A stretch of DNA of 64,000 bases from Phallusia mammillata. Taxonomy: Eukaryota. Positions within the stretch are counted from its first letter, which is position 1. Every line of letters begins with the position of its first letter. A model generated the notes under the pieces. It was not told the origin of the DNA. It saw only the letters and a list, made by a program, of their open reading frames with translations, and searched no databases. Positions 24,527 through 64,000 of this stretch are shown piece by piece. Location of the stretch: NCBI GenBank assembly GCA_965637545.1, contig OZ281496.1:27032001-27096000 (forward strand). The letters run 5' to 3'. Position numbers and translations under genes: made by a program.

Positions 24527-31138
<6,612 letters not shown>

Positions 31139-41700: not shown

Positions 41701-44289
41701 CAAAGGCCACTATAAAGGCACGTCGTTTTTAAAGATTGCCTTTTAGCAAGTATTGTGCATAAGAGGTGTTCTCGCATCCACTTTTTGAAGCTTACAACGT
41801 TTGTGTGCACAGGGTTACCGCAAGATACCTGGAGACAAGTGCCAGGGTGGCGTTCAGCCCAATACCAAAACCGAAGATCTCAAGAAAAGTTGTGCAAAGG
41901 TAAATGACTGTACAGACTGTCTTTGTGGCCTGTGTAAAGTTCTTTTGTGATTTTTCTGTCTTTGTTCCTTGAATTCCTCACTGGAAATGTAAATAGAGCT
42001 GCAAAACAGCGAACACGCAGAAAATTCTGGCACCACAAACATCGTTTTTTTTTCAAGGAAATGCCTTCTTCACATAGAAACGATTTGTGCAACGATTATT
42101 TATAAAAAGGTCCCATAATTGATTTTGTTAGTTATTACATGGTAAAAAGTGCATTGCACCGAATAACTGTTGTGGATACCTACGCTATTTATGGATTGCA
42201 ATTTGATATTGAAAACAAAATGCAATTAATTTTTTGACCAAAAACAAAAAAGCTACTGTATAATTCCATCACATTACCCGTTAAAACCATACTTACAATA
42301 AATTCTAACTAATTCAGTATAAATTCGGATACCTAAAAGGAGAGTATTGCCTTACTTGGTTTGTTCCACACAACGTTTAACAAATAGTAATACAAACAAC
42401 CGTTTGTCATAGTTCTGCGTAAAGCAGTAGTTCCCAACCTTTTTTGTCCTGTGCACCCTTTTAGTCGATATTCAAATCTAATTCCCCCCCTACAAATTTT
42501 TAACATTTCAATGTAATTCTTAGAACAGAAATTAAACTAACACAGATCACAGACAACCAGATTGTGACACAAATTCCCCCTACAAATTACAAAATCACCC
42601 CCTAGTTGGGAACCACTGGCGTAAAGCATCATTTGTGCATACTTGTAACCAGGCCTATCATTTTGCAGCCACAGATCATTGATGAAGAGTTTGGGGTTGA
42701 TCCCAATGACTTTGTATCGTACACACCTCGCCACACAAGCCGCCATATCGGCCTTGTCATCTTCCTTGTGATTATTGTCATAATGATGGGAGTCGCTCTA
42801 GGAGTGCTTTTGTATAGAAAGAGAAAAACGTAAGTAATGCACGACATAAATAGGCAGATTGCACTATAGCTATATTTGGAAAATGACCCCACAGTAAATG
42901 TGCCATGTGCCTTTAAGCCTATGTGTAGTTTTATTAGTATGGTGCCTCACATGTTTAGACTACTGCCGTGGGTTCGAATCTTACAGAAGGCTGGACTATT
43001 CGCCTTGTTCCAAAATGCTAGAAAGGCTACCACTGAATGACCAGTGGAATGTATGAATGGCTCTATTATGAACGTTAAGCAACGCCATGAAAACAGCTAA
43101 GGATGTTTAAAAACGCTAAGGCAAACAACAAACCATGAGAAATCAAATTAAAAACTTCAAAAAAGGGACTCAAACTTGACCTTGATAAAGACTCAAATTT
43201 CCTAGGCACTTGATTGAAATTAACACGATGAAAACAAAGGAAAATCGTTTTCGATAACAATGTGTTTTAACTATACGTGCTTTTTGCCAGCTGTATTTTC
43301 GACACGATAACTTCAGGGGGCTGTAAACAAAATAAATTTGAATGATTGATTTGATTTTGCCTTATATTTGTAAAGCAACTTGGATTGAGATAAATACAGC
43401 CCACAAAAACACACCGTCTTTATGTTTTGTCAACCCCAGTCGGTACTTACCCTTTTGTTTCTTTTACAGTATGTTGCGGGTACGATATACGCCACTTGCA
43501 CAAGACGACAACGAAGCAGCCAAGCGAGCCAACGGGTCCGCAGTGCACCCTCTAGTGGGCACTTCTTCATTGGTTGATGATGATGATGACACAGTAATCG
43601 TTGATCCAAGTTCTCTGGCTAACATGAAGCCTAAGAATGGAGCGACGTTGTCGTATCATGACGATTCCGATGAGGTACGTACCTATTGTATTCTGCGTAT
43701 TAGGTTGGTCACATTTCAAACTGTCAAACCTTTTATGCAAATAAATGATTTTTTTCTGAACATAATGCAGCCTTTCGATTGACAAACCCTATACAGTGGT
43801 ACTGAATATGCGATTAACCGGGTTTTTTTAAACAAAGAGTCACCATCTCAAAACGGTTTAACTAAATGTGCGATTAACCGGAACGCGTTTAATTGAAACT
43901 TCCTGAATTTTGGCAATGCGTCATTTAGATTCTTCTGTGTCCCATTATGGCTGTGCCGAGCGTAACTATTAGGATTTTCATTAACGTTTATTGCTATTTT
44001 TGTTGCTTGGTGTTTGGACTTAAATGTGCAGTACATTGGACAAACATGTACAGAGGTGTAAACAAAGTCCGTAAGTTAAAACGCAGTAAAATTTTTCAAA
44101 AGCTGCGATTACGGCGATTAAACGTCATATTTGTGTGACGTCATACAACCATACCCTGCTCTTGTCAAGGAAAGAACATCTAGTTTATCACCTTTTCCTA
44201 TCACTTACACATTAATATTTTAATGCAACACACTTATTTGTAACAGCCCAGCTAATAACGCGACTTTTTAGGACCTCCTTGTCACGTGA
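32721..44289 (+). CDS. SORT1: Sortilin (VPS10-domain sorting receptor), multi-exon
   Basis: Signal peptide and propeptide with furin sites RTKR and RQKR (32721-32952). BNR/Asp-box repeats ([32 protein letters not shown]), 10CC region [13 protein letters not shown] (~41812-41899), TM segment [23 protein letters not shown] (~42745-42815), and a cytoplasmic YTPL motif with a terminal acidic dileucine YHDDSDE/DLLVT* (last exon 44272-44289). Confidence 0.93.
35298..35977. mobile_element. Non-autonomous hAT-type element in a sortilin intron
   Basis: Perfect 15-bp TIR CAGTGGTTCCCAACC / GGTTGGGAACCACTG and subterminal ATTCCTCCC repeats. No clear TSD. Confidence 0.8.
38599..39500. mobile_element. Probable interspersed repeat beginning with a 14-bp hairpin (Helentron/HINE-like); right boundary uncertain
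   Basis: Hairpin TATGGGTCCCCTTC-CCT-GAAGGGGACTCATA at 38599-38629, followed by a T-rich tract. It sits in an unusually long (~2 kb) sortilin intron. The family call is an inference. Confidence 0.35.
40550..40895 (-). mobile_element. Probable tRNA-derived SINE relic
   Basis: Pol III B-box GAGTTCGAATCCC on the minus strand (40863-40875). No intact A-box or cloverleaf. Boundaries approximate. Confidence 0.4.
42425..42618. mobile_element. hAT-type MITE in a sortilin intron
   Basis: TIRs CAGTAGTTCCCAAC / GTTGGGAACCACTG. Perfect 8-bp TSD GCGTAAAG. Confidence 0.9.
42915..43075 (+). mobile_element. Possible tRNA-derived SINE fragment
   Basis: B-box-like GTGGGTTCGAATC at 42968-42980 with a degenerate upstream region. 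Confidence 0.3.
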
Positions 44290-47166: not shown

Positions 47167-47383
47167 CAGGGGTTCTTAACCTGGGGTGCACGCACCCCCA
47201 AGGGGTGCGAGAACTGTTCCTAGGGGGTGCGGGGATGCTGAATCATTAAGGTTGGTTAGGTCTATTCTATTTAGGCAATTGCAGAAGGGGGAGCGAAAAT
47301 TGGTTAGTGATTTGAAAGGGGGTGCGAAAATTGGTTGGTGATTTGAAAGGGGTGCAGCAAGGAAAAAAGGTTAAGAACCACTG
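47167..47383. mobile_element. hAT-type MITE, family B
   Basis: TIRs CAGGGGTTCTTAACC / GGTTAAGAACCACTG. Perfect TSD GCTTATGT. Differs from 24141-24327 mainly by an internal ~30-bp duplication. Confidence 0.92.
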
Positions 47384-48129
47384 GCTTATGTTTTCACATG
47401 CAGAAAACCATGGGGTACCATACAGTGTTTGGTACCAGCCTTTAGCAACCACGTGTGTTTGTGATGAAAAACAATGGTTACATCATTTCGAACGAAGCAC
47501 AAAAAATAATCTTAAGTGCCCGACTGTCAATAAAGTGAACTCCATGCCTTAGTAATCAATTGTTTGTTTGTGGTCGGACAGGCAATAGTTACATCTAACG
47601 TATAAGGATACAGGAACACACACTAGCGTTTCTCATTACAATCGTTCGCCACCTCGTCAAGACATCAAGCAAACAGCGTTGTCTCAACCTTGCTAACCGC
47701 CAATGTGTCCAATGCAATTAAATCAGAGGTTGGCAAACATTGGGTTTACGCGCGGTACGGCCGATATTTACGTCACTGTTCTGGATATACTATTGACTGG
47801 CCGTCATTAGCCAAGTAACGAGGCATTTGACATCGGTTTCGGCCTGTCAGACAGTATCAAAACAAGACAATAGGCTCCCGGCCGGAGAAAAGCCACTCCT
47901 TGGCTATTATTTATCAAACAAGCGAATACTGGCGTCAAGGCAAAGCGTTGCTATACGGATCGCACCAACAAACTTTTGTATGCCAAATACGGTGTCCACC
48001 CTTTCTCTTCAAAGCAGCAAGTATTATATAAAGCAAGATGCAGAATGGTTTCAAGCAGAACATTCGCAGCAATCGAAGCAAACGCAAGTACGTCCAAGAC
48101 AAGCGAAGAACAACATTTTTCCGAAAATC

Positions 48130-50818
48130 ATGACTTCAGTATACTTTGCCCTATTGGCTGTCTTGTGTAAGTTGCAATTTTTATCCTTTTTAAAATTTTA
48201 AGTGAAGACATTATGAAACTGGACTGTGATGTTCAAACTTGTTTTGCAGCATTTTCTGTATCCGTTAATGCTCATGGCAGACTTCTTCAACCACCCAGTA
48301 GATCTAGTATGTGGCGGTATAAAGATACCGATGAAATGTTGATACCTTACTCCGATAAAATACAATCCAACTATCAAGACAACGAACTAAACTGCGGCGG
48401 CAGAGCGGTAAACTAAAACTTTGTTTTAAAATTATTTAAGGCGCGTTTGAACGTATGGCTCGGTGTAAAAAGACCATCTTTTTGTAACTCTTTCACATGT
48501 AAATGGTACTCTTTCTGTAGCGCATATAACGCCAGGCCCATTGAAGGCGTTCCATGATATAACTTAAATGTTTTTTTTGTATAGACATTAGTCAGTTGTT
48601 TTGTAAACGGTTCAAATTTTCATCTTAAAAACAGTTTAATAGCAATGAAATGAATTCTCCATGGTGATTCGTGAAATTGTTCTATATGTAATGTTTCAAT
48701 TTTTGTGCATTTTTCAGAACCAAATTGAGCAGGGAGGTAAATGCGGGGTGTGTGGCGACCCCTATAACTCTCCTGTAAAGGAAAACGAAGCGGGAGGAAA
48801 GTATGCTCTTGGGATTATTACAAGGTTTGTGCCGATTGCTCAAAACATTTTTTTGTAACTTAATTGTTGCATTTCTATTCATAAGCTGTTGCTGCCAGTC
48901 ACAATAGACAACCTTTAAGAGCTCTTCTGGCAATTGTATTTCTGGTTAAGCAACCTGTTTAGGACGTCGAAACGTCGGCAAAAATGAAATTGCCCGAAGA
49001 ACCCAAAAGGGTTGTCGCATTAATGTTGATTTGAATTTTTTCGCATTAAAAAATGGTAACGGTAAAATAAACTTCGTTTTCTGTTCTAGAAACTTTGAAA
49101 TGGGACAAACTATCGACGTTACTGTGGAAATAACGGCTGAACACAAAGGTTTCTTTGAATTTCGTCTGTGTCCCTGGAACGACGTTGATGCTCCTATTAC
49201 GCAAGAATGCTTAGACAGGTAACTAAAGTTCATCATACGACTTTGCGCAAAATCACAAATTTGTTTTTTGACGACGAGTTCGAAAACCTGTAGCGAATCT
49301 CGATCTCCCTCGCCTGGAAGCTTGCAGTCATATTTGGCCAATTGATAATTGTTTCTTGATACAAACTGCAACGACGTTCTGCACAGACCTTTTGTAATCA
49401 AATAAGTATAATTGCAGCTGTTTCATAACAGATGAATGTCAGCCGGTTTTATCACAAAAGTCATATTTTTAGCCGGTGTTGTTGCAAAAAGTCTATTGAC
49501 ATTAACCAGTAATGTTGACCGGTTCGCTGATCCCATAATGTTTCGTGAGACGTTTCTAGAACTGGTGCAAACAGCTGAATCCCACCACTGGATGAATGTC
49601 ATTTGTCCCGTTTAAATGTTATATCCCCTCAAGCAAGCATTGTGTTACTAATCCAATGAATTAATATGTGTTTTGTTTGACTTCCAGGTATTTGCTTGAA
49701 GTCAATGGGGCCCTTAGCTGGAATCTGCCTGAGGATCCTGAGTTAGCCCAGGCCACGCATAACCTTGCAGTCAAGCTCCCTGCTGATGTCACTTGTGAGC
49801 AGTGCGTTCTCCAGTGGCGATACCACACAGGTGTGAATCCTTGTCATGTAAACTGAAAATAAAACCTACACCAATAAAATCATAAGTTAGTACGTGGGCA
49901 GGTGGCCGAACAGTCCAGGGCGCCTAACCCACAGACAGACATAAAAAAACTGATCAGAATTCGTCCTCGGGAGCTTCTTTGTTCGAACTATGTGAAAAAA
50001 GTCATTGTTCGCCAGGGCTATCACCGGCCAACAATACTATGTCAAGTTACTTGAAATGTGCCTATAAAATTATTGCTTTGTTGCAGGCAATTCTTGGGGC
50101 AAAGATGAAAACGGCGAAGGTCTTGGCTATGGAGACCAAGAAGAATTCTATGGTTGCTCTGATTTCGCCATCCAGAGCGATGGTTTAGTACCTCTGGCAA
50201 CTACAACTGTATCCAACAACGCTGTTACTAAATCTACTACGGAGGCGCCTGTTACCACGACGACCGAAACGTCATCTGACGCAACCGTTACCACGACAAC
50301 GACCGTGCCACCACCAACCACGACAACTATGGCCAGACCTGAAATGTCTGAACCAGCTCCAGGTAAAAACTGGGAAAATGTCTTTTTGCAATTTTCAATA
50401 GCAGTAAACCATAAACTTCAAACGGAATCGTCTTTATCTTAGTTTGTAAGCTTTAAAACTTGGAATAAAGAGTTTTTTTGGTTTCATAATGTCGTTTTAT
50501 AGTACTTTATAGTGACAACCAAAATAGCAAGATAGGATTGTGTGTTAAAGTCAAAGCAGCCTAGCCTAGCTACATTATGAGGAATTTGCAATCTGTGTGG
50601 TTCTAGTCAGTTATAATCCTTTTTTTGCAGAAATTGACTGCGCGACAGCAACACTCGGCCAACCATTCTTCCGTGATTGTCACTCGTTCTATATATGCGC
50701 CCATGAAAATCAGCACCCGTTTGAATTTCTATGCGCAGAAGGCACTGTTTGTGATTTCGATGGAAGATGCAAGCACCTTTGGGATGTCTCCTACCCTTGC
50801 GGAGAAAAGAAACTGTAA
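48130..50818 (+). CDS. AA15-type LPMO 1: signal peptide, catalytic domain, Thr-rich linker, CBM14-like domain; 7 exons
   Basis: MTSVYFALLAVL/SFSVSVNA then His1 in HGRLLQPPSRSSMWR. Also GKCGVCGDP, second His in ITAEHKGFFEFRLC, CEQCVLQWRYHTG, GDQEEFYGCSD, Thr-rich linker, and a final Cys-rich exon 50630-50818. Confidence 0.9.
49439..49590. mobile_element. Left-truncated family A MITE in an LPMO1 intron
   Basis: Body matches 10640-10828. Right TIR ATCCCACCACTG is present and the left TIR is missing. GATGAATGTC occurs on both sides. Confidence 0.75.
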
Positions 50819-52131
50819 TAGTGTTTGCTGCTTTATTGTTTATATTCAAAAGTTGATTAAAATGTGTATTTTTGTTTCGTATTTCAATTGCAGTAGTTTG
50901 CCTGTTACGTAGACTCACCATATCTTCACTAGATTGTGCATGTACCTCTATTTAACATTTAAACGTATAGGTTTCTAATTTTTAGTTGTAGCTTTTGTAT
51001 TATAGCTTGTTTGTATTTCGTAGTTGCCTATTCTATGCTTCTTTGAAAATGTTGTTGGAGTTTTGCAGTTTGATTATTTTGATCTGTGGTGTCAAAGTTT
51101 ATTTTGTTTATGTGTGCAGTTTGTTTATGTGTGCAGTTTGTTAATGTGTGCACAAACAAAAGCGTATTTAAGTATGTTGATTTCACACAAAAATACATAC
51201 TATTTATGAGAAAAGTCTTGTTTTGTTAAAAGTTTGTGTTAACATTTCATCCATTACAATTTTGAAAATGAATTTAAATTAATAAACAAAAAAAAATATT
51301 GGAGAGTCACGGAAAAATTGTGCTTTTTTTAGTTTGTGCATTTCGAGAGAAAAAATGTCGACAAAGGCGCGGCAGCGTGTTAAAAAGTTTGAAATCATAA
51401 ATAATGTCAAAAAAGAAGCGAATAAGTTTCACTGTGTATATTGTATGACTAAAGCAATGAGTTAATAAAATCACATGCACGGATAACACAGTTGGATAAT
51501 GTTACAAGTAGCGAAAAGAAAGAATTTGTTTACACCACTTTTTTAACAAATCTGCTAGAAAACATGTTGTTTTGTGTGGTTTGGTATATTAAACATGTGT
51601 ATTTTCTAAACTCCTTATGTTTCTGTTTTTAGCACTTTTACCTTAACATAGTAACTACAAATACTGGAAAACGCTACTAAACGGAAATGTCCAACAATCT
51701 GAATTTATGGACCAAATGTGTCAGACTTTTTGCTAAAAAATGGAAACTGTGCATATCAGCTTTGTATTCATCTAAACTTGGTGGGAAACTCTTTACTTAT
51801 TTGTGTGTAGTAATTATGATACTGTATTAGTCAAATATAATATATACCTTTAGTAACTTTAGTTTGGGCAAGTAACACTACAGAGACAATGTAACACTAT
51901 GCCTGTAAATTGTTCTATGAAGCAGAAGATTGGCCGGATAAAAAATTGTCATGATTGTATTACGGATTTTGATATTGTCTGATTTGGATACAAAAAGCCA
52001 CAGTCTACAATGATCACATGATAACCAAAAAATTATCAAGAATATGTATGATATTGATGGAAGGTTGCTTATATAAATTGTTTTTAATGCAGATATGTAA
52101 AATAATTTCCATTGTATTTAGTTACTTTGTA

Positions 52132-55100
52132 TTAAAACTTTCTGTTTGGATCCATGTTGCCACACGGTGGAGGCACCATAAATGCATGAACGCATCGGCC
52201 ATTGCTTGCACACACAGTCCCTTGTGGGCAATCAAATATATATGGATTTGGATGGGCAAACACACATCGGTAGAATGAAGTGCAAGTGTAGAAGTACACC
52301 TGCCCAGAAACTGCCTTTGAACAATCGATCACTAAACAAGTAAGTATTTGTATTAGAAAAAAAAACCTTTAAAAAACACTCATTGAAAAAAAGTGTAGCA
52401 CTCTATTACAAGAAAAGCCACTTGCACACAACAGTTTTGCTAAAGTGGCTTTTCATCCCATTAGGTTAGTTTGACTTTGAAGTCCTTACAGACAGTTAGT
52501 TTAGTGTAAAATTGATTTTGTCCTAATAATAGGCTAGTTTTAGGTTTATACTGAAATTACATTGATGTATATAATTCAGAGTTGTGAAGAAAAAAACATA
52601 ATGGTTCAACAATCCCTATGTCATTTTCATTTGAGTAACATCAATCTTTTTTAAAAATATATTGACTTGTCTGTTTCTTGTCAGAACTATATTTATATGA
52701 CATATTGTATCATATGTTTATATATATATATATATGTACTTGTTTACCTGGTGGACTTGGTGCTGCAGGTTTAGTTGTAGTTGGTGCTGGAGTTACAGCA
52801 GTGCTGGTTGCTGGAGGCATGTATGTGCTGGGTTCTGGAGGTGTATATGTGCTGGGTGTTGGAGGCTTGTATGTAGTGGGTTGCACATTTGTAGTTGTTG
52901 ATGGTTGGGTGCTTGTCATATTTGATTGTGTTGTTAGTGTGGAGGTTTCAGGTTGAGTAGTGGTGCTTTGAGGACGGTTACCAGCATTGTTGGCTTGAAT
53001 TGCAATGTCAGAGCAGCCATAGAACTCTTCCTGGTGTCCATATCCCAAACCTTCACCCTCTTCATCGACACCCCAAGAGTTGCCTATACAAATTGCCAAA
53101 GGTTGATTTAGGAGTCACCCACAAATAGGCTGCTCACTGAATGCAATAAGCCAATTTCTTTAATCACTCCTAAGCAGATTAATACTACTGTATAATAAAT
53201 CAGGCATAGATCCATCTAAGATTTTTATTGTGCAACTACATTGATTTTGGTCCAATCTTTATTAGTATGTCTACATGATAAGCATGAAGCTAAGTTTTAA
53301 ACATTCCCAACTTTGGACAAGGTCACTCAGTACTAAACACAAGGTCACTCAGTACTAATTATTGCCTGTTAAATATTGCGAAAAAATGCTTACCAGCATG
53401 ATACTTCCACTGAAAAACGCACTGCTCACAAAGAACATCATATGGCAAAATGACTTGAAAATCGTGAATGCCCACAGCCGCTGTACGGTTAGTGGGAAGA
53501 TACCACCTAATGGTGCCGTCAATAAGTCGAAGTTGTCGCCTTGAGAGATTGAACGTAAATATAGTTATGTCATATGACTGAAATCTTTGTTTGTTTTTCT
53601 GTTGTGTCAAAAACTCTTGGATGATTATTTGACCCATTGTTACCTGTTGAGGCATTCGTGTGTAACGGGGTTAGTGATGTTATTCCACGGGCAAAGGCGA
53701 AACTCCATGTAGCCTTTATGTTCTGCGGTGATTTCCACCTTAACGTTGATTACTTGTCCACGGTTATAAATCCTTCAAAATATTTGAACAAATTTACATC
53801 AAGGGTGCGCAACCTTTTTACTATGACGACCGCATTGCACAGTGGCCTCCCGGTGTCTCCTTGTACATATATATCATCTAATGGCGCCTTAAAATCCCAG
53901 ATTATCTTCTAACATGATCCACAAGTTGAACTGTCTGGAGAACAGTCTTAAGGTACACCATCGTTTGTTGTGACATTTGTGGTGTTTTTTTTCGCATTGT
54001 TGTCCATAATGTGCTTTAAAGAAAATTTGACGCGTATCGGGCTCTTTCCAGTCCCACAAACTCTATTTAGACCAGTTTTGAAAAACAAATATGTAGCAAA
54101 AGAGTTTTATTTACGTCACGGTCGCCAGTACGTGTATTTTAATTTTTAGTATACATGTTCACGGCCTACTAATTTCGTCTCCGCGGCCGCGGGTTGTGTA
54201 CGCTTTCCTTCTGTAACTGGCGATTTCCGGCAGTGATTATGTAACAGTTTTTGTTGAATCATGTCGTGATTTGGGGCTGCTGGCGAAATACGTACGTATT
54301 TGACGACACATAAGCCCCATCCTAGTTTTTCGTCACCATATAGCATAAGATAACACTGAAGTCGCAAATGATTGGTTTTTTTTAACATTTTCTACTTTTA
54401 GCCTTTTATGCACAACTCAAGCGTGAAACGCTTTAGAGCCACTGTTCTTTTATGTGAAACCTGGTTACTTTAACAGGCGTATAGTGTTAATAGTATTTCA
54501 ATATTCTCGGTATATATGGTTTTAGGGGTTTCCTGTGAGACATTAATTGGGCTGTAACTCAACGTTCAGATATAAATATCATCAAAAACTCACCTGGTTA
54601 TAATTCCAAGTGCGTAAATTCCGCCAGCTTCATTGGGTTTTACGGGATCAGCCCAGTTATCTCCACACACTCCACATTTGCCACCGTTCTCCTGCTGGAC
54701 CTGCGGTACCAAATCTCTAATGAAAATAACTACTTTACTATAGGTAAAAGTTTTACTGTTTGTTGCTGCATGTTGAGTTATATAAACACTAACTCTTTGG
54801 TAATTTTGTATTTATTAAAAGCACACTCGCTACAAATTGTCAAACAAACATGCAAGCGCACCCTTACCCAGTAGCCACCACAATACAGTTGATGGTCGCG
54901 TTTATTTTGTACAATAATATTAGCGTACGGGATTAGCATCGGGTCTTCGTACTTGAAGCGCCACAGACTTGACCGACCTGGTGGTTCCAGAAGTCTTCCA
55001 TGGCCGCTTGTGCCCGCTACCAAAACTGCGAAATAATTATCCGATTTGCTATTTTATTAGGGCAATGGTAAAATTAGAATCTTAAACTGTTTTTTTTTGC

Positions 55101-55327
55101 ATCAAATGGCTACGGTCTTTATTGCAATTGATTTAAAATAGTTTTCCTTTTAACCAATATTAGGCATTATTATTATGGGTTTGCCCGTTTTTGCACGGTA
55201 ACCAATACGCTTGCGTTTCGTTTTTTATTTTTATTCTGTGCGCATTGTAACCTTAATTAAACTGTAAGTTGGTACATCTTCAACTGTCAACAAACTTACC
55301 CACTAAGACAAAAACCGACAAGAACAT
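52132..55327 (-). CDS. AA15-type LPMO 2 with linker and CBM14-like domain
   Basis: MFLSVFVLV/VLVAGTSG then HGRLLEPPGRSSLWR. Also GKCGVCGDNW, ITAEHKGYMEFRLC, CEQCVFQWKYHAG, GHQEEFYGCSD, a Thr/Pro linker, and the Cys-rich last exon in ORF 52132..52332. Same exon layout as LPMO1. Confidence 0.9.
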
Positions 55328-56092
55328 TCTTGCCATCAATAATACCTAATTGTAATGAATTCATGCTGACCGTTGCTTATTATACGCAGGATCTGAGATT
55401 TTTAGCACGAAAAAGGAACGTTTAAGAGAAAATTGAAACGAATACTGCGAAAATAAATGCTTACTTTTGTCGTGAAAGTTTAAATGTCTCATGCTCTTCT
55501 CCCTTTGTCACGTGTTACGCAGCAACCTTTGACACGACTGACCTACCAGGCCAACTTTGTTGCCAAATTCCACGAGTTGACAAATATTCCTGTGTATTTT
55601 TACAGGCTAACACACAAAACGCTTATTGGCCTGAAAAAAAACTTTTGTCAGTTTTTTAACCTTTATATTTGGCCTTTATATCCAGTTGAAATTTTTTGTT
55701 GGCCTGAAAAATTAAGTGTGCTAAATTACAAAGATTTTATTCTTTTTTTGTACTGTAATGTTTTAAATGTTGTGGCCCTAACCTACCTACGTCCATTTTG
55801 TCTGTACAAAGTTCTAAACTTAAAAAAAAGTTGTGCTCCTGTTAAAATCGTTTTTTTTACAGATTTTTCCTGGCCTCGGGGATTTCACAAACTATGATCA
55901 AGTGTGGCCTAATTGGTAAAATGAATGAGATATATGGAATAGTCCTTTCAGCAACATCAACAGTGTAAAGTCACGATACAGGTAATGGCAACATCCTGAT
56001 TATTTTAATAGGATTCCTACGCACTCGGAAAAGTGCAAAATTCGGTTTTGTTGCCATTGACCACAACGCAATTCCACAAGTAAGGTAAGTTA

Positions 56093-56144
56093 AGCTGCAG
56101 ACAGTGCACACTGTTTCGACCTATAAGGTCTCATCAGTGCAGCT
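56093..56144 (-). ncRNA. Type I hammerhead ribozyme
   Basis: Minus strand reads AGCUGCA-CUGAUGA-GACCU(UAU)AGGUC-GAAA-CAGU(GUGC)ACUG-UC/UGCAGCU. All core nucleotides are present, with a 7-bp stem I, 5-bp stem II, 5-bp stem III and a GUC cleavage triplet (C17 = 56100). Confidence 0.92.
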
Positions 56145-56463
56145 GGTGACGAGAGATCGGCCGCATTGGCTATAGTGTAGCCCTCCAACGGCACTCCAGT
56201 TTGTTGGGAGCAGCAGGGTACAACCCCATGCATCACCTAGTTTGTGCGATGCCACAACTGGGCATACAGCACAGATGAAACTGGCTCACAATGGCCAAGC
56301 AACTGCTTGGGAACCACAGTGAAGTCGGCTCAGTGTCACAGTATAAATGTAAAAGCATGTGAGCCAATAAATGATAAGCAGCAGACAGTGCACTGTCTTT
56401 TTATAGGTCGAAACAGTGTGCACTGTCTGCAGCTTATCATTTATTGGCTCACATGCTTTTACA
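56093..56463 (-). mobile_element. Retrozyme / Penelope-associated non-autonomous retroelement with a hammerhead ribozyme
   Basis: Flanked by the 12-bp direct repeat TAAGGTAAGTTA (56081-56092, 56464-56475). One complete hammerhead plus a second cleavage-site remnant at 56384 define a 284-nt monomer. An inverted partial copy lies at 56400-56463. Confidence 0.8.
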
Positions 56464-58132
56464 TAAGGTAAGTTATATATCTATATATGTATGTCCAAGT
56501 GCTGCCTCTTGTTGGAATACTTCTTCAATGGAAATTCAAAATGACACAAATTTGTTGCCGTCAGGACCAAAGTTTGGAAACTGCAACACAATGCCAACCA
56601 AGAAAGTTGTAAAATAAAGGTATAGCGATTAAACAGTGGTATCGGCTCGGTTAATCGCTACCTAAATAAAATAGTCACTAAAAGGACAGGCAAGATATAG
56701 CCTACAGGTCAATTGCACTACCTGCTAAAATGTAACGAGACAGTTTTGTAAACAAGTCGCAAAGGTGGATCTGCTTGTCGAAGAAGTCCAAGTTAACGAT
56801 TTCTGTTATAAAGCATACAACACTTTGCTTTGATTACAAAAACCTGCAAACGACAGATTGAAGGTGTTTATGTGTTCGACCATAATATAGGGTGTGTCAT
56901 TCGGTTGTCACTGTTGTGGGTTTAAACTTAAAACCACAACTTCAGCTTTAAAGCGTTCGTTGGACGAACGATTTTGCAAGTTGAGCATAAAAAACATAAC
57001 ATGGAACGTCTGTGCAGCTGTGTAGTCTATAGGTGCACTATATTCCATAAATAAAAAAAGTTTCTATCATAACTAGACCTACTACTTCAGAAGTTATGTG
57101 TTATTTAAATGGTGTTCGGTTCTCATTGTTCATATTATTCATAACCCAGGTATATCATGTAGTTTATCCATGATGACTTGTTTTTTTGTGCGACGATTTA
57201 TACATGTTCTATGATGAGGGTACTTTAGGCCTTTTTTGAAAAAGGTATATTCCTAAACACTAATAATGATTACTCTTTGCTTGTTACTGCATTACTGAAT
57301 CCATGTAGCCCTGTCTATGGGCGCTGTTAAAGTCCTTGTAGCACCGGGACATAAGGCTTAGTTCTAAATGACCGGTCTTTCATTTTAGTCGTTATACAAC
57401 AAGTGGAACTAACATGATTTTTTACGTTGTTTGAATACCGGAAAGAGGCGTTTTGGCTTATCACGGCTTCATCTGTGGTATTTCACGGTGTTTTGTGATC
57501 AATTTTAAACACCTGTTGACTTATTTATTCATCGTTTCAAAACAGTGCTTTTCGCAAAGGCGTCTGGCAGTTTGACCTGATTTTGTTCTGAAAAGGCTGT
57601 GCAATGCAATACTTTTTTGGCCTTGAAGGAATTTAATGTAGGCTACCCTATGGACTTACTTTAGTTTGGAATATTATTGTATAAGCAATAGCCTTGCTGG
57701 TTCTGTCTGTTCAATAGAACTTATAAGTTTGCTCTGGCAAATTTTTCACAAAAATTAGTAAACAACGACGAAATTGAATGTTGGGATTATATTTTTACAA
57801 ACTCAAATCAACAAACTTTGCATACGATGGTTGATAGACACAAACAATTTGTGACAATTAGATTTCAAATGCTTTTCAAACTACTGTCAAATCATACTTC
57901 GGACCTGTTAACTTTATGACTTTTGAAAGCAGGCCGTCAAAAACAAGCTTGCTAAAAACTGTTAAACTAGTTACCTACAATAAAAGTTCATGCTTAAAGT
58001 AAGCTTCATGAAGTGGTTAGCCAAGAACCTACCACAGACATTACTAAATGTTACACTATTGTGATGACATACGAAAACGCAAAGCTACATTATATATGTC
58101 TGGTAAATACAGTGGTATATGTTTGATGACGC

Positions 58133-61100
58133 CTAATGATTGACCCCACATTGCTTGATTGCGTATAGATGCTTACACAAGCCATTTTCACACTTAGTTC
58201 CTGCTGGACAATTGAAAACAAACGCTTTTGGGTGGCCAGCTACGCACCGGTAAAACTGGTTGCAGTTAAGACAGTAGAATGGTGAGAAAGCATAGCTCGA
58301 TTGACAGTCAATCTCTAAAAAATAAAAACACAAATTAATCAGTCCAACTTTACCTCTATAGCCCAGGCCCTAAGTGACTTGGTGTATTGTGCAGGAAGCT
58401 ATTGTTATCGACGGTTGGTGGGTAAATCTGTTTATTTTAGAACGTAAACCGTTTCTCCCACTTTTTACGAAATCTTTTAACCGAAAAATGGAAGAACAAT
58501 TGTTCAGGTTACACCAAATCTTTAGAAATTGTTTGTCTTGTTAACTACCTGGCATTATTTGAAGAAAAAATCTACCCCAAGTCTTTCTTTGCAAAGCAAT
58601 CTCGCAACAAGTCTACATAAAGTTTTTTTGGTAACAGGTAGATCTATGTTGCAAGCATGAGTGCGTGATGAACGAAGTAAATCAAATTGGGTTGTCGTTT
58701 TTCATTACCTAGGCATATTGAAACTTGCGCTTTTTATAGCTGCCCCCTAAGCACCTGAAATTTAATGGATGATTTAATTTAAACATAGGCTAGTTGTTTC
58801 TCATGCAACAGTTGGACCAAAAATCTTGGGATTATCAAGTATTGCGGGTGGAATACTTAACCACAGCCTATAAGCTTTGTGCACAAAAACGCTTACTGCC
58901 GGTTTTTAGGTGGCATGACGCTTCTCCGGTCAGCCGTAAATAAATACCAGCACACACCTGGTGGTTTTGCAGGTGCCGCGGTGATCGGTTGATTTGTCTG
59001 GGTTGTTGTGGGTCTGCGAGTCCTAGTCGTGGCTCTTGTGGTAGTAGGGGCCTGGGTAGTTGTAGTTGTCATAGGCGGTGGCTGAGTACTTGTCGTAGTT
59101 GCGCCGTCAGTGGGTTCTAACTCGTCGTCATCAACGATCATGATGTCAGAGCAAGCGTAAAACTCCTCCTGTGGTCCGCGACCAAGTCCACTAACGCCAT
59201 TTTCATCTGTTCCCCATGAATTGCCTACATTGTAAATAGACATTCAAACTCTTTATACCTTATAGGCCTATAGGTTCTGAAACGGTAAATGGGGCATATG
59301 GCTTATACGACCATTACACCTGAAATTAAATCATACCCTACACTGTAGGGCAGTGGTTCTCAAACTTTTTTGACCGCGACCCAAATCTGAGCTTTATGAA
59401 CATCTTGCGACCCAAGCCCAAAACAACAAAAATGTATTTTTTATTTTTGTATGAATAGTTATCATCCTTAAATGCTAACTGTTACTTTTCAAGTTCAGTT
59501 TCATATGATTAACCTCCTATAGCATTCCCCGTGCTAACGTGTTACAATCGCCGTGTGCGTAATAGAAAATTGGAAGGCTATGTCTGTATGTTATAATGAT
59601 TGGTTCATTTTGCTGTATAGCGTTGTCGAGTGAGGCTGTATTTGGCTACGGTGCTATCAAAACTCTCAGAAAACCACTTACTTATGCTGCAATACTCCAA
59701 GGTTACTAAGATAAAGCCACATAAAATGGCTATGATACAATAATTCAGTCATGACTGAGAATTGAAAATACTTAAAAAATGAAATGTAAAAAGTTCGTTT
59801 GGGCAGAATTGAATCACCACAGCGCGACCCATTTTGTGACCCTGCGCGACCCATGTTTGGGTCGCGACCCATACTTTAAGAACCACTGCTGTAGGGGCTA
59901 CAGCGTGTTTGGACGAAAATGGCAGTCTATATGACCAGATGTTTTCAAATAGGGTGTATTTACCTTCACTTGGTGCATCTTCTGGCTGAATACACGTTAG
60001 TAAATGTGTTCAAATTAGTGTGCTAAGGGAACTTAGGGTATTTATCTTTGAAATTTGTAATAGGAAAATAGGTTAAATAACATGTGCTGTAAAGAAAACC
60101 TGTTTTGTCGGGAATTGTTATATAGGCGAAGTAACACGAAACTTTACCTGTGTGATACCTCCACTGCAACACGCACTGTGTCTCGCATATCGCATCATCA
60201 GGAAGTTTAACTTTTAGGTCGTGTATACCGATGGCTCTCGGCGGAGGAGGCAAAAACCACCTTGTGTTTCCGTCCGCAAACCGCAACAAATGCCTAAAAA
60301 CATATGATCTTAACCCGCAACAATTCTAGAGTAGTTAAAGCTTTGTGTTTCATTCGTTTCTCAAGCACGTTTTCATGCATGGGGTCGCTTTTGGAGCACC
60401 CTTTTTTCGTGTTCATGGAGCGTTGAATGAATGCAGTTTTTGTAAATCACAGTTGAACAAAAAAACGTTCGATAAATGCAGATTTTTTTAAGTACAAGCT
60501 GTTCATGGGAAACTATTCAATTACAATGGCTTTTGATTGACCTTTAGCATATGGTTACCTGTTGAGACAATCGTGGGTGATAGGAGTTTTGAAATCGTCC
60601 CAAGGACAGAGTCTGAACTCGAAATATCCCTTGTGCTCAGCGGTTATCTGCACCTTGACGTCGATCAACTGTCCACGGTTGTAGATTCTGGAAAGAACGA
60701 TTTGGTTGTTAATGTTTGATGTGTTACGTAACGGACTTATAGATTCTCCAATTATCTACCGCAGTTAAAACTGTAGTGTGTTTAAATTAGCTGCCAAACC
60801 AGTTTTCAAGCAACCAGACAAAAAACTCTTGGCATTCACAGTTAATGTAATGGTTCAAATTAGTTACTTTTTTGGTTTAAATTGCTTAAATGGCCCAATT
60901 CGATTGCTGATTGAGATAAGAACGTGACTTTGTATTGTAGTGAAACTAAAGAAATAAAACTGTGATGGAAAAATTGTAGGTCAAAGGAACAAAATAAAAC
61001 TGAAGTATTCTATTTTAAAATGCAGCGAAGCTTATAAAAACCATGAGCTCGTTTTTTACTTGCCTCGCTATAACGCCTCGTGCGAACATGCCACCAGCTT

Positions 61101-61582
61101 CATTTGGTTTGTTAGGGTCCGCCCAATTGTCCCCACACACGCCACATTTTCCGCCATTGGCTTTTTGAACCTTAAATTACGGCGAAAAAAACTTTAAGAG
61201 CAAGGAGGTTGCCAAAATTGTGCATTTCAACGAAATAACACAAACATACAAAAACTGTTTTTGATTGGAAGCGGTATTCGCTTTGTAAAAAAGACATAAA
61301 CTTTAACGAGTAAGTTTACTCTTACTGAAAATCCACCACAGTAAAGTGCATTGTCGTTGTAGTTTGGCAGTATGTTTTCGGCGAAAGGAATTATCATGGG
61401 ATCTTTGTCTTTCAGTCGCCACAAGCTTGATCTTCCTGCAGGCTCCAGAAGTCTTCCATGGGCGTTAACCCCGACAATATGAGCTAGAATATTACAAATA
61501 GTTACGACCAATTGTAAATGCCATTGTTCTGTCGGCTACACTTACCCACTACAATGCAAAATAAAAAGCAGACGTTTGTCAT
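58133..61582 (-). CDS. AA15-type LPMO 3 with linker and CBM14-like domain
   Basis: Exon 1 61582-61546 MTNVCFLFCIVV, then AHIVGVNA-HGRLLEPAGRSSLWR. Also GKCGVCGDNW, ITAEHKGYFEFRLC, CETQCVLQWRYHTG, GPQEEFYACSD, Thr-rich linker, and a Cys-rich last exon ending CGVNH*. Confidence 0.9.
59351..59888. mobile_element. Non-autonomous hAT element in an LPMO3 intron
   Basis: TIRs CAGTGGTTCTCAAAC / TTTAAGAACCACTG. Perfect TSD CTGTAGGG. Subterminal CGCGACCC repeats. Confidence 0.92.
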
Positions 61583-62029
61583 GTCTCTACTTCCTGGACA
61601 ACAGCAAAGTAAAGCTCTATGGCCCCACTCGAATAACTTATACCAACTGACTTCCTAAAGAGGAAAAAAATATCAGCTTTTCGCAGAGATCTGAGCTGAA
61701 TCACCTACAACGGTTGCACCACGTGTTAGGAGGTAAACAATGGGTTCAACCACTTTGCTTAACTCCGTTCCTTCCAGTGTGACTTGCTACGCCAAATGCA
61801 TGTCATGGTATGTTTTACGTCTTTGACGCGTTTCAACTGGTTGTTAACTTGTCAAAATGATTTAAGTCTTTGCGTTGTCGCATTTGTCATGGTATTACGT
61901 GTTCAGAGTGTGCAATACATAGTTTTCTGGAGAATGTCGTTGACAAGACAGATGGAAAGAACTTCCTTCTTCAAGTGATCAAATGGTACATTCGCAGTTT
62001 TGAAAAGTGAGTGTCCGCACGTTTAGCTT

Positions 62030-62254
62030 GATGTGAACCCGGCGTTTCTTAATTAATCATACCGGGTTAGTCCTATACAGTGCAAAAAGAGCAATGCATC
62101 CAGGGTTTAAGTTAAGTCACCTGTCATGAGGGCGAATCGCGATGTAAACCCGGCGTTTCTTAATTAATCATACCGGGTTAATTCTATACAGTACAAAAAG
62201 AGCAATGCATTCAGGGGTTAAGTTAGGTCACCTGTTATGAGGGCGAATCGCGAT
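62030..62254. repeat. Two-copy 111-bp tandem duplication
   Basis: Units start at 62030 and 62141 with high identity. Each contains the stem AACCCGG...CCGGGTT. Confidence 0.9.
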
Positions 62255-62844
62255 TTATTAAAATCGCTTGTGGATTACTGTGGTTAGTTAGGTTATTACA
62301 ATAAAGGTGTTTTTACGGAAATTGTGACCTTTAGGCCTATGACCACAACATGGAGTTGCTAAACGCTGGGTGCATGGGTTTTTGGGTTTTTTGGAGTGTA
62401 TCTCATATTCGTGCTTACAATGGCCATCGAACGTGATATTTCGCACAAAGGTTGAGCGGAAAGAACAATTTATCTTGACGTTGAAGTTGTCAGTCCTAGT
62501 TAGACCGAAAATTTGGCCTCGATCGCGGTTTGTGTAGGCCTACTTGGCACAACTATGTTGGAAACAAAATGTATGTGTTCATGGGGCTTCTCGCGAGAAA
62601 GCAAGGTCCTGGACGGAAAACAAACATTTTATCGCGCCCTTTTAACGGCCTTGACGTAGTTAAATTCTCTTTTGTATGAAAATAGTGAACTATTTTTTTC
62701 AAAATTCTATACCCGGCAATCGCCAGCAACACATTTAAAAACAGCAATAAACAATTGATGTCTAATCGCCATAATAGCACCCAGTCAACTTAAAGGCATT
62801 ATACCGAATTAAGTCACTTACGTTCAACACTTATGTTTTTCTCA

Positions 62845-63021
62845 ACTTGAGGGGTTCGTTACGGGGCCGCAGAAAACTTTCTGAAAGTTTACATTAAATC
62901 AAAGTTGTAATAATCGTAATTAGATTTCAGTGCTGAACATTTGTGGTTTTAAAGGCCGGTCTGTGACAACAATTTCAGTTTCAAACCGGTCCACAGTGCA
63001 AAAAAGGTTTCCGACCCCTGC
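62845..63021. mobile_element. Degenerate copy of the 8654-8880 MITE family
   Basis: Right end TTCAGTTTCAAACCGGTCCACAGTGCAAAAAAGGTTTCCGACCCCTG matches the right end of 8654-8880. The left end is eroded. Confidence 0.6.
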
Positions 63022-63307
63022 ATTACGCTATGTACATGACATCAAAGGTACTTGCAATTTTTCTGACGGTTTATTTTCTTGCGATTACAAAGTACGTAAA
63101 ACAGCGTTTTTTTAAATACAGCACAAAACATAACCGTGTAAGCGCAGTCATAAAAAGATGTATCAGTTTCTTGTCTATAGAAGGTTACAAAAAGAGACAG
63201 GTGACGAAGGTTCACGAAAGGGCTGGAAGTCATAGTACTGGATCTTGTTGTTGTGGTAGTCGGAGCTGGGGTATAGTCGTGGTTGTATCTGCGCCGTCGG
63301 TAGCTTC

Positions 63308-63886
63308 TTACTCGTCGCCATCAACGATCATGATGTCAGAACAAGCGTAAAACTCCTCCTGTGGTCCCAGACCAAGTCCACTGACGCCATTTTCATCTGT
63401 TCCCCACGAATTGCCTACATTGTAATAGACATATTCGAACTCTTTAAATCTTTTATATGTCCTGAAAGAGTAAATTGGGCCTATGGCTTATACGGCCCTT
63501 AAGCTATACACCTGGAATTAAATCCTACAGCATATTTTGACGAAATTAGGGTTAGTCGAGACCATAGGTTCTCAATTAGAGTTAGATATACCTTCACGGG
63601 GTACATTTTTGGGGTACAGTCGCAATCTAAACTTTATCTTTGAAATGTGTCATAGGAAAATAGTTTAAAAAATATGCGCTGTAAAGAAAACCTGTTTTGT
63701 CAGGACTCGCATTGTTAAATAATCGCTATTTGATATTTACCTGTATGATACTTCCACTGCAACACGCACTGTTTCTCGCATACCACATCATCAGGTAGTT
63801 TAAGTTTTAGGTCGTGAAAACCGACCGGTTCCGGCGTAGAAGACAAATACCACTTTGTATCACCGTCCTCAAACCGCAACAAAAAG
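63308..63886 (-). CDS. AA15-type LPMO 4 (partial; 5' exons beyond the window), ending at a premature TAA directly after the catalytic domain
   Basis: Intact exons 63886-63741 (FLLRFEDG...CEKQCVLQWKYHT) and 63414-63308 (GNSWGTDENGVSGLGLGPQEEFYACSDIMIVDGDE*). Close paralog of LPMO3. It could be a pseudogene. Confidence 0.75.
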
Positions 63887-64000
63887 CTGAAAACATGTGA
63901 TCTTAAGTCACAACAATTCAGGAGGGGGTAAAGCTTTGTCTTTGTCTAGTTTCTCAAGCACGTTTTGAGTTTTGTTCATGCATGAGGGTTTTGGGGCACC

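What the first reader, a model, noticed from the sequence alone, without database searches (positions are those of the whole stretch)
48130..64000. Tandem array of at least four AA15-type LPMO genes in a probable tunicate
Seen: three complete paralogs with His1 directly after the signal peptide, the T-A-E-H second His with the conserved Ala at -2, and a Q-E-E-F-Y-x-C motif, plus a fourth partial copy; orientation + - - -. Established: AA15 LPMOs are copper enzymes that oxidatively cleave chitin and/or cellulose and were characterised in arthropods. Tunicates uniquely among animals make cellulose, and they also have chitin in the gut barrier. By alignment the axial position looks like Phe, as in chitin-active forms (inference). 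An expanded, diversified LPMO set could remodel tunic or filter fibres or digest algal walls. I know of no functional description of this in chordates.
Basis: partly seen in the sequence, partly recalled or inferred. Interest (0 to 1): 0.74.

Follow-up and report, generated by a model that had tools for sequence, protein, structure and literature searches.

The report
Four tandem LPMO genes, sea squirt
A sea-squirt genome carries four neighbouring genes for secreted copper enzymes (AA15 LPMOs) built to bind and oxidatively cut chitin. The genes are real and two are transcribed, but such genes were already recorded in sea squirts and many invertebrates, so this is an ordinary new member whose role in a chordate is still untested.

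Summary
Window 48130-64000 carries three complete 7-exon genes (g1 on +, g2 and g3 on -) and the 3' part of a fourth (g4, on -).

- **Fourth copy:** g4 ends at a TAA directly after the catalytic domain, so it has no linker or CBM14.
- **Family:** the only solved structure matched is Thermobia TdAA15A (5MSZ), collinearly over four exons.
- **Transcription:** spliced contigs from public runs confirm all six g3 introns, one of them GC-AG, and show g4 is transcribed.
- **Host:** the closest proteins are ascidian (Clavelina, Ciona, Styela). Ciona intestinalis has the same sortilin-then-LPMO gene order with two tandem copies, so the host is an ascidian.

CBM14 plus axial Phe point to chitin, not tunic cellulose. 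Scallops carry six or seven copies, so four is not a cellulose-linked expansion.

AA15 genes in tunicates were already noted in PMC5823890 and PMC8704543. I found no functional study in any chordate. A neighbouring-window note had already flagged g4. I class this as a new member of a known kind, of modest interest.

The parts
48130..50818 (+). g1: complete 7-exon gene, 345 aa. Signal peptide, AA15 LPMO domain, Thr/Pro linker, CBM14. Exons 48130-48166, 48250-48407, 48718-48824, 49090-49218, 49688-49830, 50087-50362, 50631-50818.
   Evidence: Phase-consistent GT-AG model. Pfam per exon: LPMO_10 on exons 4 and 5 at 22.0 and 20.7 bits (cut-off 23), CBM_14 on exon 7 at 20.8 bits (cut-off 22.1). Catalytic exons are 71% identical to Ciona savignyi and Clavelina orthologues. 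Transcription not tested.
52132..55336 (-). g2: complete 7-exon gene, 370 aa, same architecture with the longest linker. Exons 55300-55336, 54868-55025, 54594-54700, 53644-53772, 53394-53539, 52748-53083, 52132-52331.
   Evidence: Phase-consistent GT-AG model. CBM_14 on exon 7 at 22.2 bits, above the 22.1 cut-off; LPMO_10 on exon 4 at 22.2 bits. Lys replaces the Tyr24-equivalent surface aromatic. Transcription not tested.
58133..61582 (-). g3: complete 7-exon gene, 341 aa, same architecture. Exons 61546-61582, 61326-61483, 61064-61170 (GC donor), 60559-60687, 60148-60293, 58958-59224, 58133-58314.
   Evidence: All six introns are bridged by spliced contigs of public runs X8 and X1, including the GC-AG intron 60687/61064. 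Model.
63308..64000 (-). g4: 3' part of a fourth copy. Exon 5 is 63741-63886. The last coding exon is 63308-63414 and ends at TAA 63308-63310 directly after the catalytic domain. Decayed linker remnant downstream; no CBM14 exon in 62000-63300.
   Evidence: The TAA sits where g3 has TTA (Leu). A spliced contig in X3 bridges 63413/63740 and runs unspliced through the stop to 63196. Against g3: introns 80-85% identical, dS about 0.21.
48273..48275 (+). His1 codon of g1. The equivalents are g2 55000-55002 (-) and g3 61458-61460 (-).
   Evidence: Aligns with His1 of 5MSZ.
49136..49144 (+). Ala-Glu-His of g1, the second histidine of the brace with Ala at -2. Equivalents are g2 53718-53726 (-) and g3 60633-60641 (-).
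   Evidence: The exon-4 profile matches 5MSZ residues 74-115 at E 3.3e-9, with Ala and His on Ala89 and His91. Codons checked.
50146..50148 (+). Axial Phe codon of g1 (the F of QEEFY). Equivalents are g2 53022-53024, g3 59160-59162 and g4 63350-63352, all on -.
   Evidence: Ungapped alignment of exon 6 to 5MSZ residues 164-192 puts this Phe on Tyr184. Tyr184 is the axial residue according to PMC5823890. Codons checked.
50631..50818 (+). CBM14 (peritrophin-A) exon of g1. Equivalents are g2 52132-52331 (-) and g3 58133-58314 (-).
   Evidence: Pfam CBM_14 at 20.8, 22.2 and 17.3 bits against a 22.1 cut-off. Seven invariant Cys. Ascidian orthologues score 25-33 bits.
36924..43677 (+). Upstream sortilin/Vps10 gene. 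It is a synteny anchor, not part of the array.
   Evidence: Pfam Sortilin-Vps10 at 42.8 bits, cut-off 33. Eight exons are collinear with the Ciona intestinalis sortilin gene that lies directly upstream of Ciona's two tandem LPMO+CBM14 genes.

Best explanation
The region is a tandem cluster of four paralogous ascidian genes for secreted, copper-dependent lytic polysaccharide monooxygenases of family AA15.

After signal-peptide cleavage, His1 and the His of the T-A-E-H motif would form the histidine brace that holds one copper. A Phe lies at the axial position. In three copies a Thr/Pro-rich, probably O-glycosylated, linker tethers the catalytic domain to a C-terminal CBM14 module. That module would dock the enzyme on chitin fibrils, where it would oxidatively break glycosidic bonds in crystalline chitin and open it to chitinases. 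The fourth copy lost linker and CBM14 through a nonsense codon. It is still transcribed, as a free catalytic domain.

The most likely site of action is the gut, either in turnover or remodelling of the animal's own chitin-nanofibre barrier membrane or in digestion of dietary chitin.

Shown here: the gene structures, motifs, homology, synteny, and transcription of g3 and g4. Inferred: copper binding, chitin as substrate, and the tissue.
For: - **Gene models and motifs:**
- **Family:** collinear matches to TdAA15A (5MSZ), exon 2 to residues 1-32, exon 4 to 74-115 (E 3.3e-9), exon 5 to 118-160 (1.5e-4), exon 6 to 164-192 (9e-4). No other significant solved relative.
- **Axial Phe** sits on Tyr184. 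TdAA15B, which has axial Phe, is chitin-specific (PMC5823890).
- **CBM_14 hits** on the last exon. Full-length ascidian orthologues score LPMO_10 68-79 bits over model positions 1-183, starting at the His, plus CBM_14 25-33 bits.
- **Transcription:** spliced RNA-type contigs for g3 and g4.
- **Selection:** pN 0.17-0.27 against saturated pS 0.83-0.88 among g1-g3, and dN/dS 0.12 for g3/g4 exon 6.
- **Conservation:** same exon structure in Clavelina and Styela; tandem pairs in Styela and Ciona, with sortilin synteny in Ciona.
- **Literature:** the Ciona gut membrane is framed by chitin nanofibres and decorated by CBM14 proteins (PMC6109156). Tunicate AA15-GH18 chitinase fusions exist (PMC5823890). 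Insect group III AA15s are multi-copy, midgut-specific and act on the peritrophic matrix (PMC9156745).
Against: - No enzymatic, copper-binding or tissue-expression data exist for any tunicate LPMO.
- Single exons fall just under Pfam's LPMO_10 cut-off, and I did not search the joined protein.
- The part of the Ciona gut-membrane proteome table I read lists no LPMO.
- TdAA15A cleaves both cellulose and chitin, so family membership alone does not fix the substrate.
- The Ciona gut membrane also contains some cellulose fibres (PMC6109156).
- Transcription of g1 and g2 was not tested.
- The catalytic domain has 8 Cys, not the 10 conserved in Thermobia and its closest matches.
Confidence: 0.6

Rival explanations
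1. The enzymes act on tunicate cellulose. They would remodel tunic or filter fibres, or digest algal cellulose.
For: Tunicates make cellulose. TdAA15A is active on cellulose as well as chitin (PMC5823890). The Didemnum genome paper labels the tunicate LPMO orthogroup as cellulose-related and finds it in all tunicates but no other chordate compared (PMC8704543). Cellulose fibres are intermingled in the Ciona gut membrane (PMC6109156).
Against: The appended module is CBM14, which is chitin-specific, not a cellulose-binding module. All four copies have axial Phe, the chitin-type state. Closely similar AA15 domains occur in molluscs, annelids, brachiopods and arthropods, which make no cellulose, often in higher copy number. 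The cellulose label in PMC8704543 appears to derive from the Pfam family name, not from an assay.
Confidence: 0.15
2. The proteins serve mainly as chitin-recognising immune or barrier components, for example tethering or attacking chitin-bearing microbes such as fungi or diatoms in the gut. Polysaccharide cleavage would be secondary or absent.
For: CBM14 is the module by which Ciona VCBP-C docks on gut chitin and traps microbes (PMC6109156). The gene family is multi-copy and diverging. Exon 5 of the young pair g3/g4 shows dN/dS about 0.95, a pattern common in immune genes, but from only 48 codons.
Against: The complete histidine brace, Ala at -2 and the axial aromatic are invariant in every copy, and the catalytic exons are under purifying selection. 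That would not be expected for a purely binding role.
Confidence: 0.15
3. Some or all copies are decaying duplicates without function. In particular g4 would be a pseudogene.
For: g4 has a premature stop relative to its paralogues. A decayed, frameshifted linker remnant follows it, and no CBM14 exon is present. Its exon 5 has dN/dS near 1.
Against: g1-g3 have intact reading frames and consistent splice sites. g3 is spliced exactly as modelled. g4 is transcribed and spliced, its stop falls exactly at the domain boundary, and its exon 6 has dN/dS 0.12. Catalytic-only AA15s are normal in insects (group III, PMC9156745).
Confidence: 0.07

Closest known systems
Thermobia domestica TdAA15A (PDB 5MSZ) and TdAA15B, the founding characterised AA15 LPMOs
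   Same: His1 directly after the signal peptide. Ala-x-His second histidine (Ala89/His91). Conserved R-L-C-P-W, C-V-L-Q-W and Q-E-E motifs. Collinear sequence match over exons 2, 4, 5 and 6. Axial Phe as in the chitin-specific TdAA15B. An aromatic at the Tyr166 position (Trp here), and at the Tyr24 position in g1 and g3.
   Different: The Thermobia enzymes are catalytic domain only, whereas three of the four copies here add a mucin-like linker and CBM14. TdAA15A has axial Tyr. There are 8 rather than 10 Cys in the catalytic domain, because the Cys169-Cys178 loop pair is absent. g2 has Lys at the Tyr24 position. Activity is untested here.
Ascidian orthologues annotated as uncharacterised proteins: Ciona intestinalis LOC100181283 and LOC104265352, Clavelina lepadiformis LOC143469315 and LOC143470513, Styela clava LOC120341781
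   Same: Same domain order (LPMO_10 plus CBM_14) and the same exon structure. Catalytic-domain identity is 59-71%. Tandem pairs occur in Ciona and Styela. In Ciona the pair has the same upstream sortilin neighbour.
   Different: Four copies here against two at the syntenic Ciona locus. The orientation is mixed (+ - - -) rather than all on one strand. One copy here has lost linker and CBM14.
Insect LPMO15 group III (midgut-specific, multi-copy, e.g. TcLPMO15-3s and LmLPMO15-3)
   Same: AA15 catalytic domain. Several redundant copies per genome. A proposed or shown role on gut chitin, either the peritrophic matrix or dietary chitin. g4 resembles them in being catalytic domain only.
   Different: The insect group III proteins lack CBM14. 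Orthology is not implied: in the tree of database proteins, ascidian sequences form their own branch apart from the protostome ones (99% SH-aLRT).
Bacterial and viral AA10 LPMOs (CBP21, fusolin, GP37)
   Same: Same Pfam family (LPMO_10), fold class and histidine brace, and often axial Phe with chitin activity.
   Different: Only a marginal sequence match here (7ZE9, E 0.56) against E 3e-9 for AA15. These are intron-rich animal genes.

Membership tests
CAZy AA15 LPMO | The mature N-terminus is a histidine exposed by signal-peptide cleavage | tested here: met
   A 20-residue hydrophobic leader ends VNA or TSG immediately before HGR in g1-g3. This His aligns with His1 of 5MSZ and with position 1 of Pfam LPMO_10 in the ascidian orthologues. 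No signal-peptide predictor was available. g4's N-terminus lies outside the window.
CAZy AA15 LPMO | Second histidine of the copper brace, with Ala two residues before it (Ala89/His91 of TdAA15A) | tested here: met
   The exon-4 profile matches 5MSZ residues 74-115 at E 3.3e-9. T-A-E-H lies on Q-A-P-H and is invariant in g1-g3.
CAZy AA15 LPMO | Aromatic (Tyr or Phe) at the axial position (Tyr184 of TdAA15A) | tested here: met
   Ungapped alignment of exon 6 to 5MSZ residues 164-192 puts the Phe of QEEFY on Tyr184. It is Phe in all four copies.
CAZy AA15 LPMO | Sequence relatedness closer to AA15 members than to other LPMO families | tested here: met
   5MSZ is the only significant PDB match for four separate exons. 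The best other LPMO-type chain (7ZE9, named only 'chitin-binding type-4 domain-containing protein') reaches E 0.56. Ascidian orthologues match Coptotermes 'LPMO B' at E 1e-53. The dbCAN AA15 model was not available.
CAZy AA15 LPMO | Pfam LPMO_10 (PF03067) profile match above the gathering score | tested here: inconclusive
   Single exons score 20.7-22.6 bits against a cut-off of 23, at collinear model positions 86-125 and 141-170. The joined protein was not searched. Ascidian orthologues 59-71% identical in the catalytic domain score 68-79 bits.
CAZy AA15 LPMO | Copper-dependent oxidative cleavage of chitin and/or cellulose | not testable with these tools
   This needs recombinant protein, a reductant, and MALDI or HPAEC of the products.
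CBM14 (peritrophin-A chitin-binding module) | Pfam CBM_14 (PF01607) match and the six-cysteine pattern | tested here: met
   g2 scores 22.2 bits, above the 22.1 cut-off. g1 (20.8) and g3 (17.3) fall just below. Cys at aligned positions 3, 16, 22, 34, 40, 46 and 56 is invariant. Orthologues score 25-33 bits. A profile search of PDB sequences gave nothing significant. Chitin binding itself is untested.

The most novel reading that the evidence does not exclude
These genes are among the only LPMOs reported so far in the chordate lineage. They would have been kept from the bilaterian ancestor by tunicates alone, and the paralogues would have divided labour on the tunicate-specific chitin-plus-cellulose fibre composites of the gut barrier membrane, and possibly the tunic. 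Under this reading the CBM-less fourth copy and the fast-changing exon-5 segment mark a shift in substrate or partner. That would make oxidative polysaccharide cleavage part of chordate mucosal-barrier biology.
Probability: 0.15. Interest if true: 0.65.

Novelty: new member of a known kind. Interest (0 to 1): 0.35.

Why it matters
I found no functional study of an LPMO from any chordate. Ascidians build a chitin-nanofibre gut barrier that has been proposed as the forerunner of vertebrate mucus layers. A small, transcribed set of secreted AA15-CBM14 enzymes at a locus shared with the model species Ciona gives a concrete way to ask how that barrier is turned over, and whether animal LPMOs distinguish chitin from cellulose. 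The mere presence of the genes is not new. The four-copy number is ordinary for invertebrates.

Tried and rejected
- **Cellulose-linked expansion.** Rejected on three grounds: the CBM14 module, axial Phe, and equal or larger copy numbers in scallops and Thermobia.
- **More copies upstream.** tblastn with exon peptides found none in 1-48000.
- **Top hit of the representative search.** P0001, a 3325-aa Saccharothrix WD40 protein with 25 short stretches, is a repeat artefact and was ignored.
- **Finding the window's own proteins in the protein collection.** None had more than about 71% identity, so no stored full-length reference exists.
- **CBM14 exon profile against PDB sequences.** Only a non-significant Cys-rich eggshell protein came back.
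- **Ciona gut-membrane proteome table.** No LPMO in the part I read. The top of the table was not read.
- **Paper searches for AA15 with Branchiostoma, or with horizontal transfer.** Nothing relevant. One broad paper search was wasted on ascidian papers without LPMO.
- **Rfam at gathering score over 46000-64000.** No match.
- **Structure prediction.** Not run, because only homologues, not the window's spliced proteins, could be submitted, and the sequence match to 5MSZ already settles the fold.
Full report
**Observation**

Six-frame translation of 46-64 kb shows exon-sized open segments carrying HGRLL…, ITAEHKG…, CVLQW(R/K)YH and NSWG…QEEFYxCSD. They occur once on the + strand and three times on the - strand.

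I read the DNA and checked splice sites and phases by script. This gives three complete 7-exon genes:
- g1, 48130-50818, + strand, 345 aa
- g2, 52132-55336, - strand, 370 aa
- g3, 58133-61582, - strand, 341 aa

It also gives the last two coding exons of a fourth gene, g4 (63308-63886, - strand), which the window end cuts off. All three complete genes share a 37-nt first exon (12 codons plus one base) and identical intron phases. Introns are GT-AG except g3 intron 3, which is GC-AG.

tblastn with the exon peptides finds no further copy in 1-48000.

**Anatomy**

Exon 1 and the start of exon 2 encode a 20-residue hydrophobic leader ending VNA (g1, g3) or TSG (g2) immediately before His-Gly-Arg.
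- Exons 2 to 6 encode the catalytic domain.
- The rest of exon 6 is a Thr/Pro/Ser-rich linker of about 55-80 residues.
- Exon 7 is a cysteine-rich module with seven invariant Cys.

Pfam on single exons, by reference, gives:
- LPMO_10 on exon 4 of g1-g3 (22.0-22.6 bits) and on exon 5 of g1 (20.7 bits), against a cut-off of 23, at collinear model positions.
- CBM_14 on exon 7 at 20.8 (g1), 22.2 (g2) and 17.3 (g3) bits, against a cut-off of 22.1.

Full-length ascidian homologues that are 59-71% identical in the catalytic domain score 68-79 bits on LPMO_10, covering model positions 1-183 and starting exactly at the His, and 25-33 bits on CBM_14.

**Family**

Against all PDB sequences, the only significant relative of any exon is Thermobia domestica TdAA15A (5MSZ). 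The matches are collinear:

| Exon | 5MSZ residues | E-value | Note |
|---|---|---|---|
| 2 | 1-32 | 0.19 (not significant) | His on His1 |
| 4 (profile) | 74-115 | 3.3e-9 | |
| 5 (profile) | 118-160 | 1.5e-4 | |
| 6 | 164-192 | 9e-4 | ungapped |

- The Ala and His of T-A-E-H fall on Ala89 and His91.
- The Phe of QEEFY falls on Tyr184, which the structure paper names as the axial residue (PMC5823890).
- The best other LPMO-type chain, 7ZE9 (named only 'chitin-binding type-4 domain-containing protein'), reaches only E 0.56.

According to PMC5823890, axial Phe is the state of most chitin-active AA10s and of the chitin-specific TdAA15B.

There are two differences from Thermobia. The catalytic domain has 8 rather than 10 Cys, because the Cys169-Cys178 loop pair is missing. 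And g2 has Lys at the Tyr24-equivalent surface aromatic.

**Transcription**

I laid Logan contigs of four public runs of the same (coded) organism on 58100-64000.
- Contigs in X8 and X1 skip exactly the modelled introns of g3: 58314/58958, 59223/60147, 60292/60558, 60687/61064 (ends CT..GC, which is GC-AG on the gene strand), 61168/61324 and 61483/61546.
- A contig in X3 joins 63413/63740 of g4 and then runs unspliced through the TAA to 63196.

So g3 and g4 are transcribed and spliced as modelled.

The RNA contigs also carry in-frame 6-nt insertions in the g3 linker, at 59035-59099. This suggests allelic length variation in the linker.

**The fourth copy**

g4's last coding exon ends …IMIVDGDE followed by TAA at 63308-63310, where g3 has TTA (Leu). 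Downstream, a recognisable but frameshifted remnant of the linker follows. No CBM14 exon is found in 62000-63300.

g3 and g4 are young duplicates: introns are 80-85% identical and dS is about 0.21. Exon 6 is conserved (dN/dS 0.12), whereas exon 5 has dN/dS about 0.95, from only 48 codons.

g4 is best read as a transcribed, catalytic-domain-only derivative. A pseudogene cannot be excluded, because its 5' exons lie outside the window. A first-reader note on the adjoining window (s1-351784) calls it complete, which I could not check.

g1, g2 and g3 are old duplicates under purifying selection: pS 0.83-0.88 (saturated) and pN 0.17-0.27.

**Host and evolution**

A profile of exon 2 searched against 1.84 billion representative proteins gave 803 hits.
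- The named closest hits are ascidian: Clavelina lepadiformis and Styela clava.
- Searching with the Clavelina protein returned Clavelina, Ciona intestinalis, Ciona savignyi and Styela clava first. Molluscs, annelids, brachiopods and arthropods followed at about 45-50% identity.
- No other deuterostome appears in the best 120.
- No stored protein is identical to the window's, so the species is not one of those four.

Summed exon by exon, g1 is 71% identical to Ciona savignyi and Clavelina proteins but only 63-65% identical to g2 and g3. g2 and g3 are 69% identical to each other. So g1 looks like the conserved orthologue, and g2-g4 look like a younger, more derived subgroup.

The same exon structure is seen in Clavelina and Styela. 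Styela has two tandem LPMO+CBM14 genes.

In Ciona intestinalis a sortilin-Vps10 gene is followed by two tandem LPMO+CBM14 genes. In the window, sortilin exons at 36924-43677 are collinear with Ciona's (44-78% identity; Pfam 42.8 bits) and are followed by the array. This microsynteny confirms an ascidian host and shows that the locus is ancestral.

In a tree of database proteins only (39 rows, window genes left out), the ascidian sequences form one branch (SH-aLRT 99%) apart from protostomes. This fits vertical descent with loss in other chordates better than recent transfer.

**Function**

Three lines of evidence favour chitin as substrate:
- CBM14, which is chitin-specific and is the same module that anchors VCBP-C to the Ciona gut chitin membrane (PMC6109156).
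- Axial Phe.
- The reported AA15-GH18 chitinase fusions in tunicates (PMC5823890).

The nearest functional analogue is the multi-copy, midgut-specific insect group III LPMO15, which acts on the peritrophic matrix (PMC9156745).

The cellulose idea is weaker. The module is not a cellulose binder, similar enzymes abound in animals without cellulose, and four copies is unremarkable: Argopecten has 7 distinct entries, and Pecten and Mizuhopecten have 6 each. Thermobia has more than 20.

**What is known**

PMC5823890 (2018) already lists tunicates among the holders of AA15, and CBM14 among the modules fused to it. PMC8704543 (2021) reports an LPMO orthogroup present in all tunicates and, among the chordates compared, only in them.

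Full-text searches for LPMO terms together with ascidian, Ciona or tunicate found no functional study.

**Verdict**

This is a real and correctly recognised gene cluster, and a new member of a known kind. It gains modest interest from three things: the absence of any functional work on chordate LPMOs, the conserved locus in a model ascidian, and the naturally CBM-less fourth copy.

Noticed in passing
window 36924-43677 (+): Sortilin/Vps10-domain receptor gene directly upstream of the LPMO array. Eight exons are collinear with the Ciona intestinalis sortilin gene, which occupies the same position next to Ciona's LPMO pair.
   Followed up: yes
window 59350-59890 (inside g3 intron 5): An insert of about 540 nt that is absent from the homologous g4 intron (923 nt against 326 nt). 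Many RNA-type contigs cover it at high word depth (30-230) with 95-99% identity. It looks like a dispersed, transcribed repeat (SINE- or MITE-like) inserted after the g3/g4 duplication.
   Followed up: partly
window 59035-59099 (g3 linker): RNA contigs from two studies carry different in-frame 6-nt insertions relative to the assembly. This suggests allelic length polymorphism of the Thr/Pro linker.
   Followed up: no
window 56094-56143 (-) and 56361-56450: Between g2 and g3 there is a full-length but sub-threshold Hammerhead type I match (22.8 bits against a gathering score of 34, E 0.007). About 220 nt away lies a long perfect-looking hairpin that hits miRNA-precursor models on both strands. 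This is compatible with the retrozyme-like element noted by another reader. Nothing reaches gathering score.
   Followed up: partly
window 62030-62251: Two head-to-tail copies of a 111-nt unit (93% identical) in the spacer between g3 and g4.
   Followed up: no
window 26687-27037 (-): An exon with the start of a papain-family cysteine protease domain (Peptidase_C1, 17.5 bits, below cut-off). It lies in the region another reader noted as cathepsin F with cystatin copies.
   Followed up: partly
g2 exon 2, window about 54900-54905 (-): g2 has Lys where g1, g3 and TdAA15A have the surface Tyr (Tyr24 of TdAA15A), which flanks the flat substrate face. This is a possible difference in substrate binding among the paralogues.
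   Followed up: no
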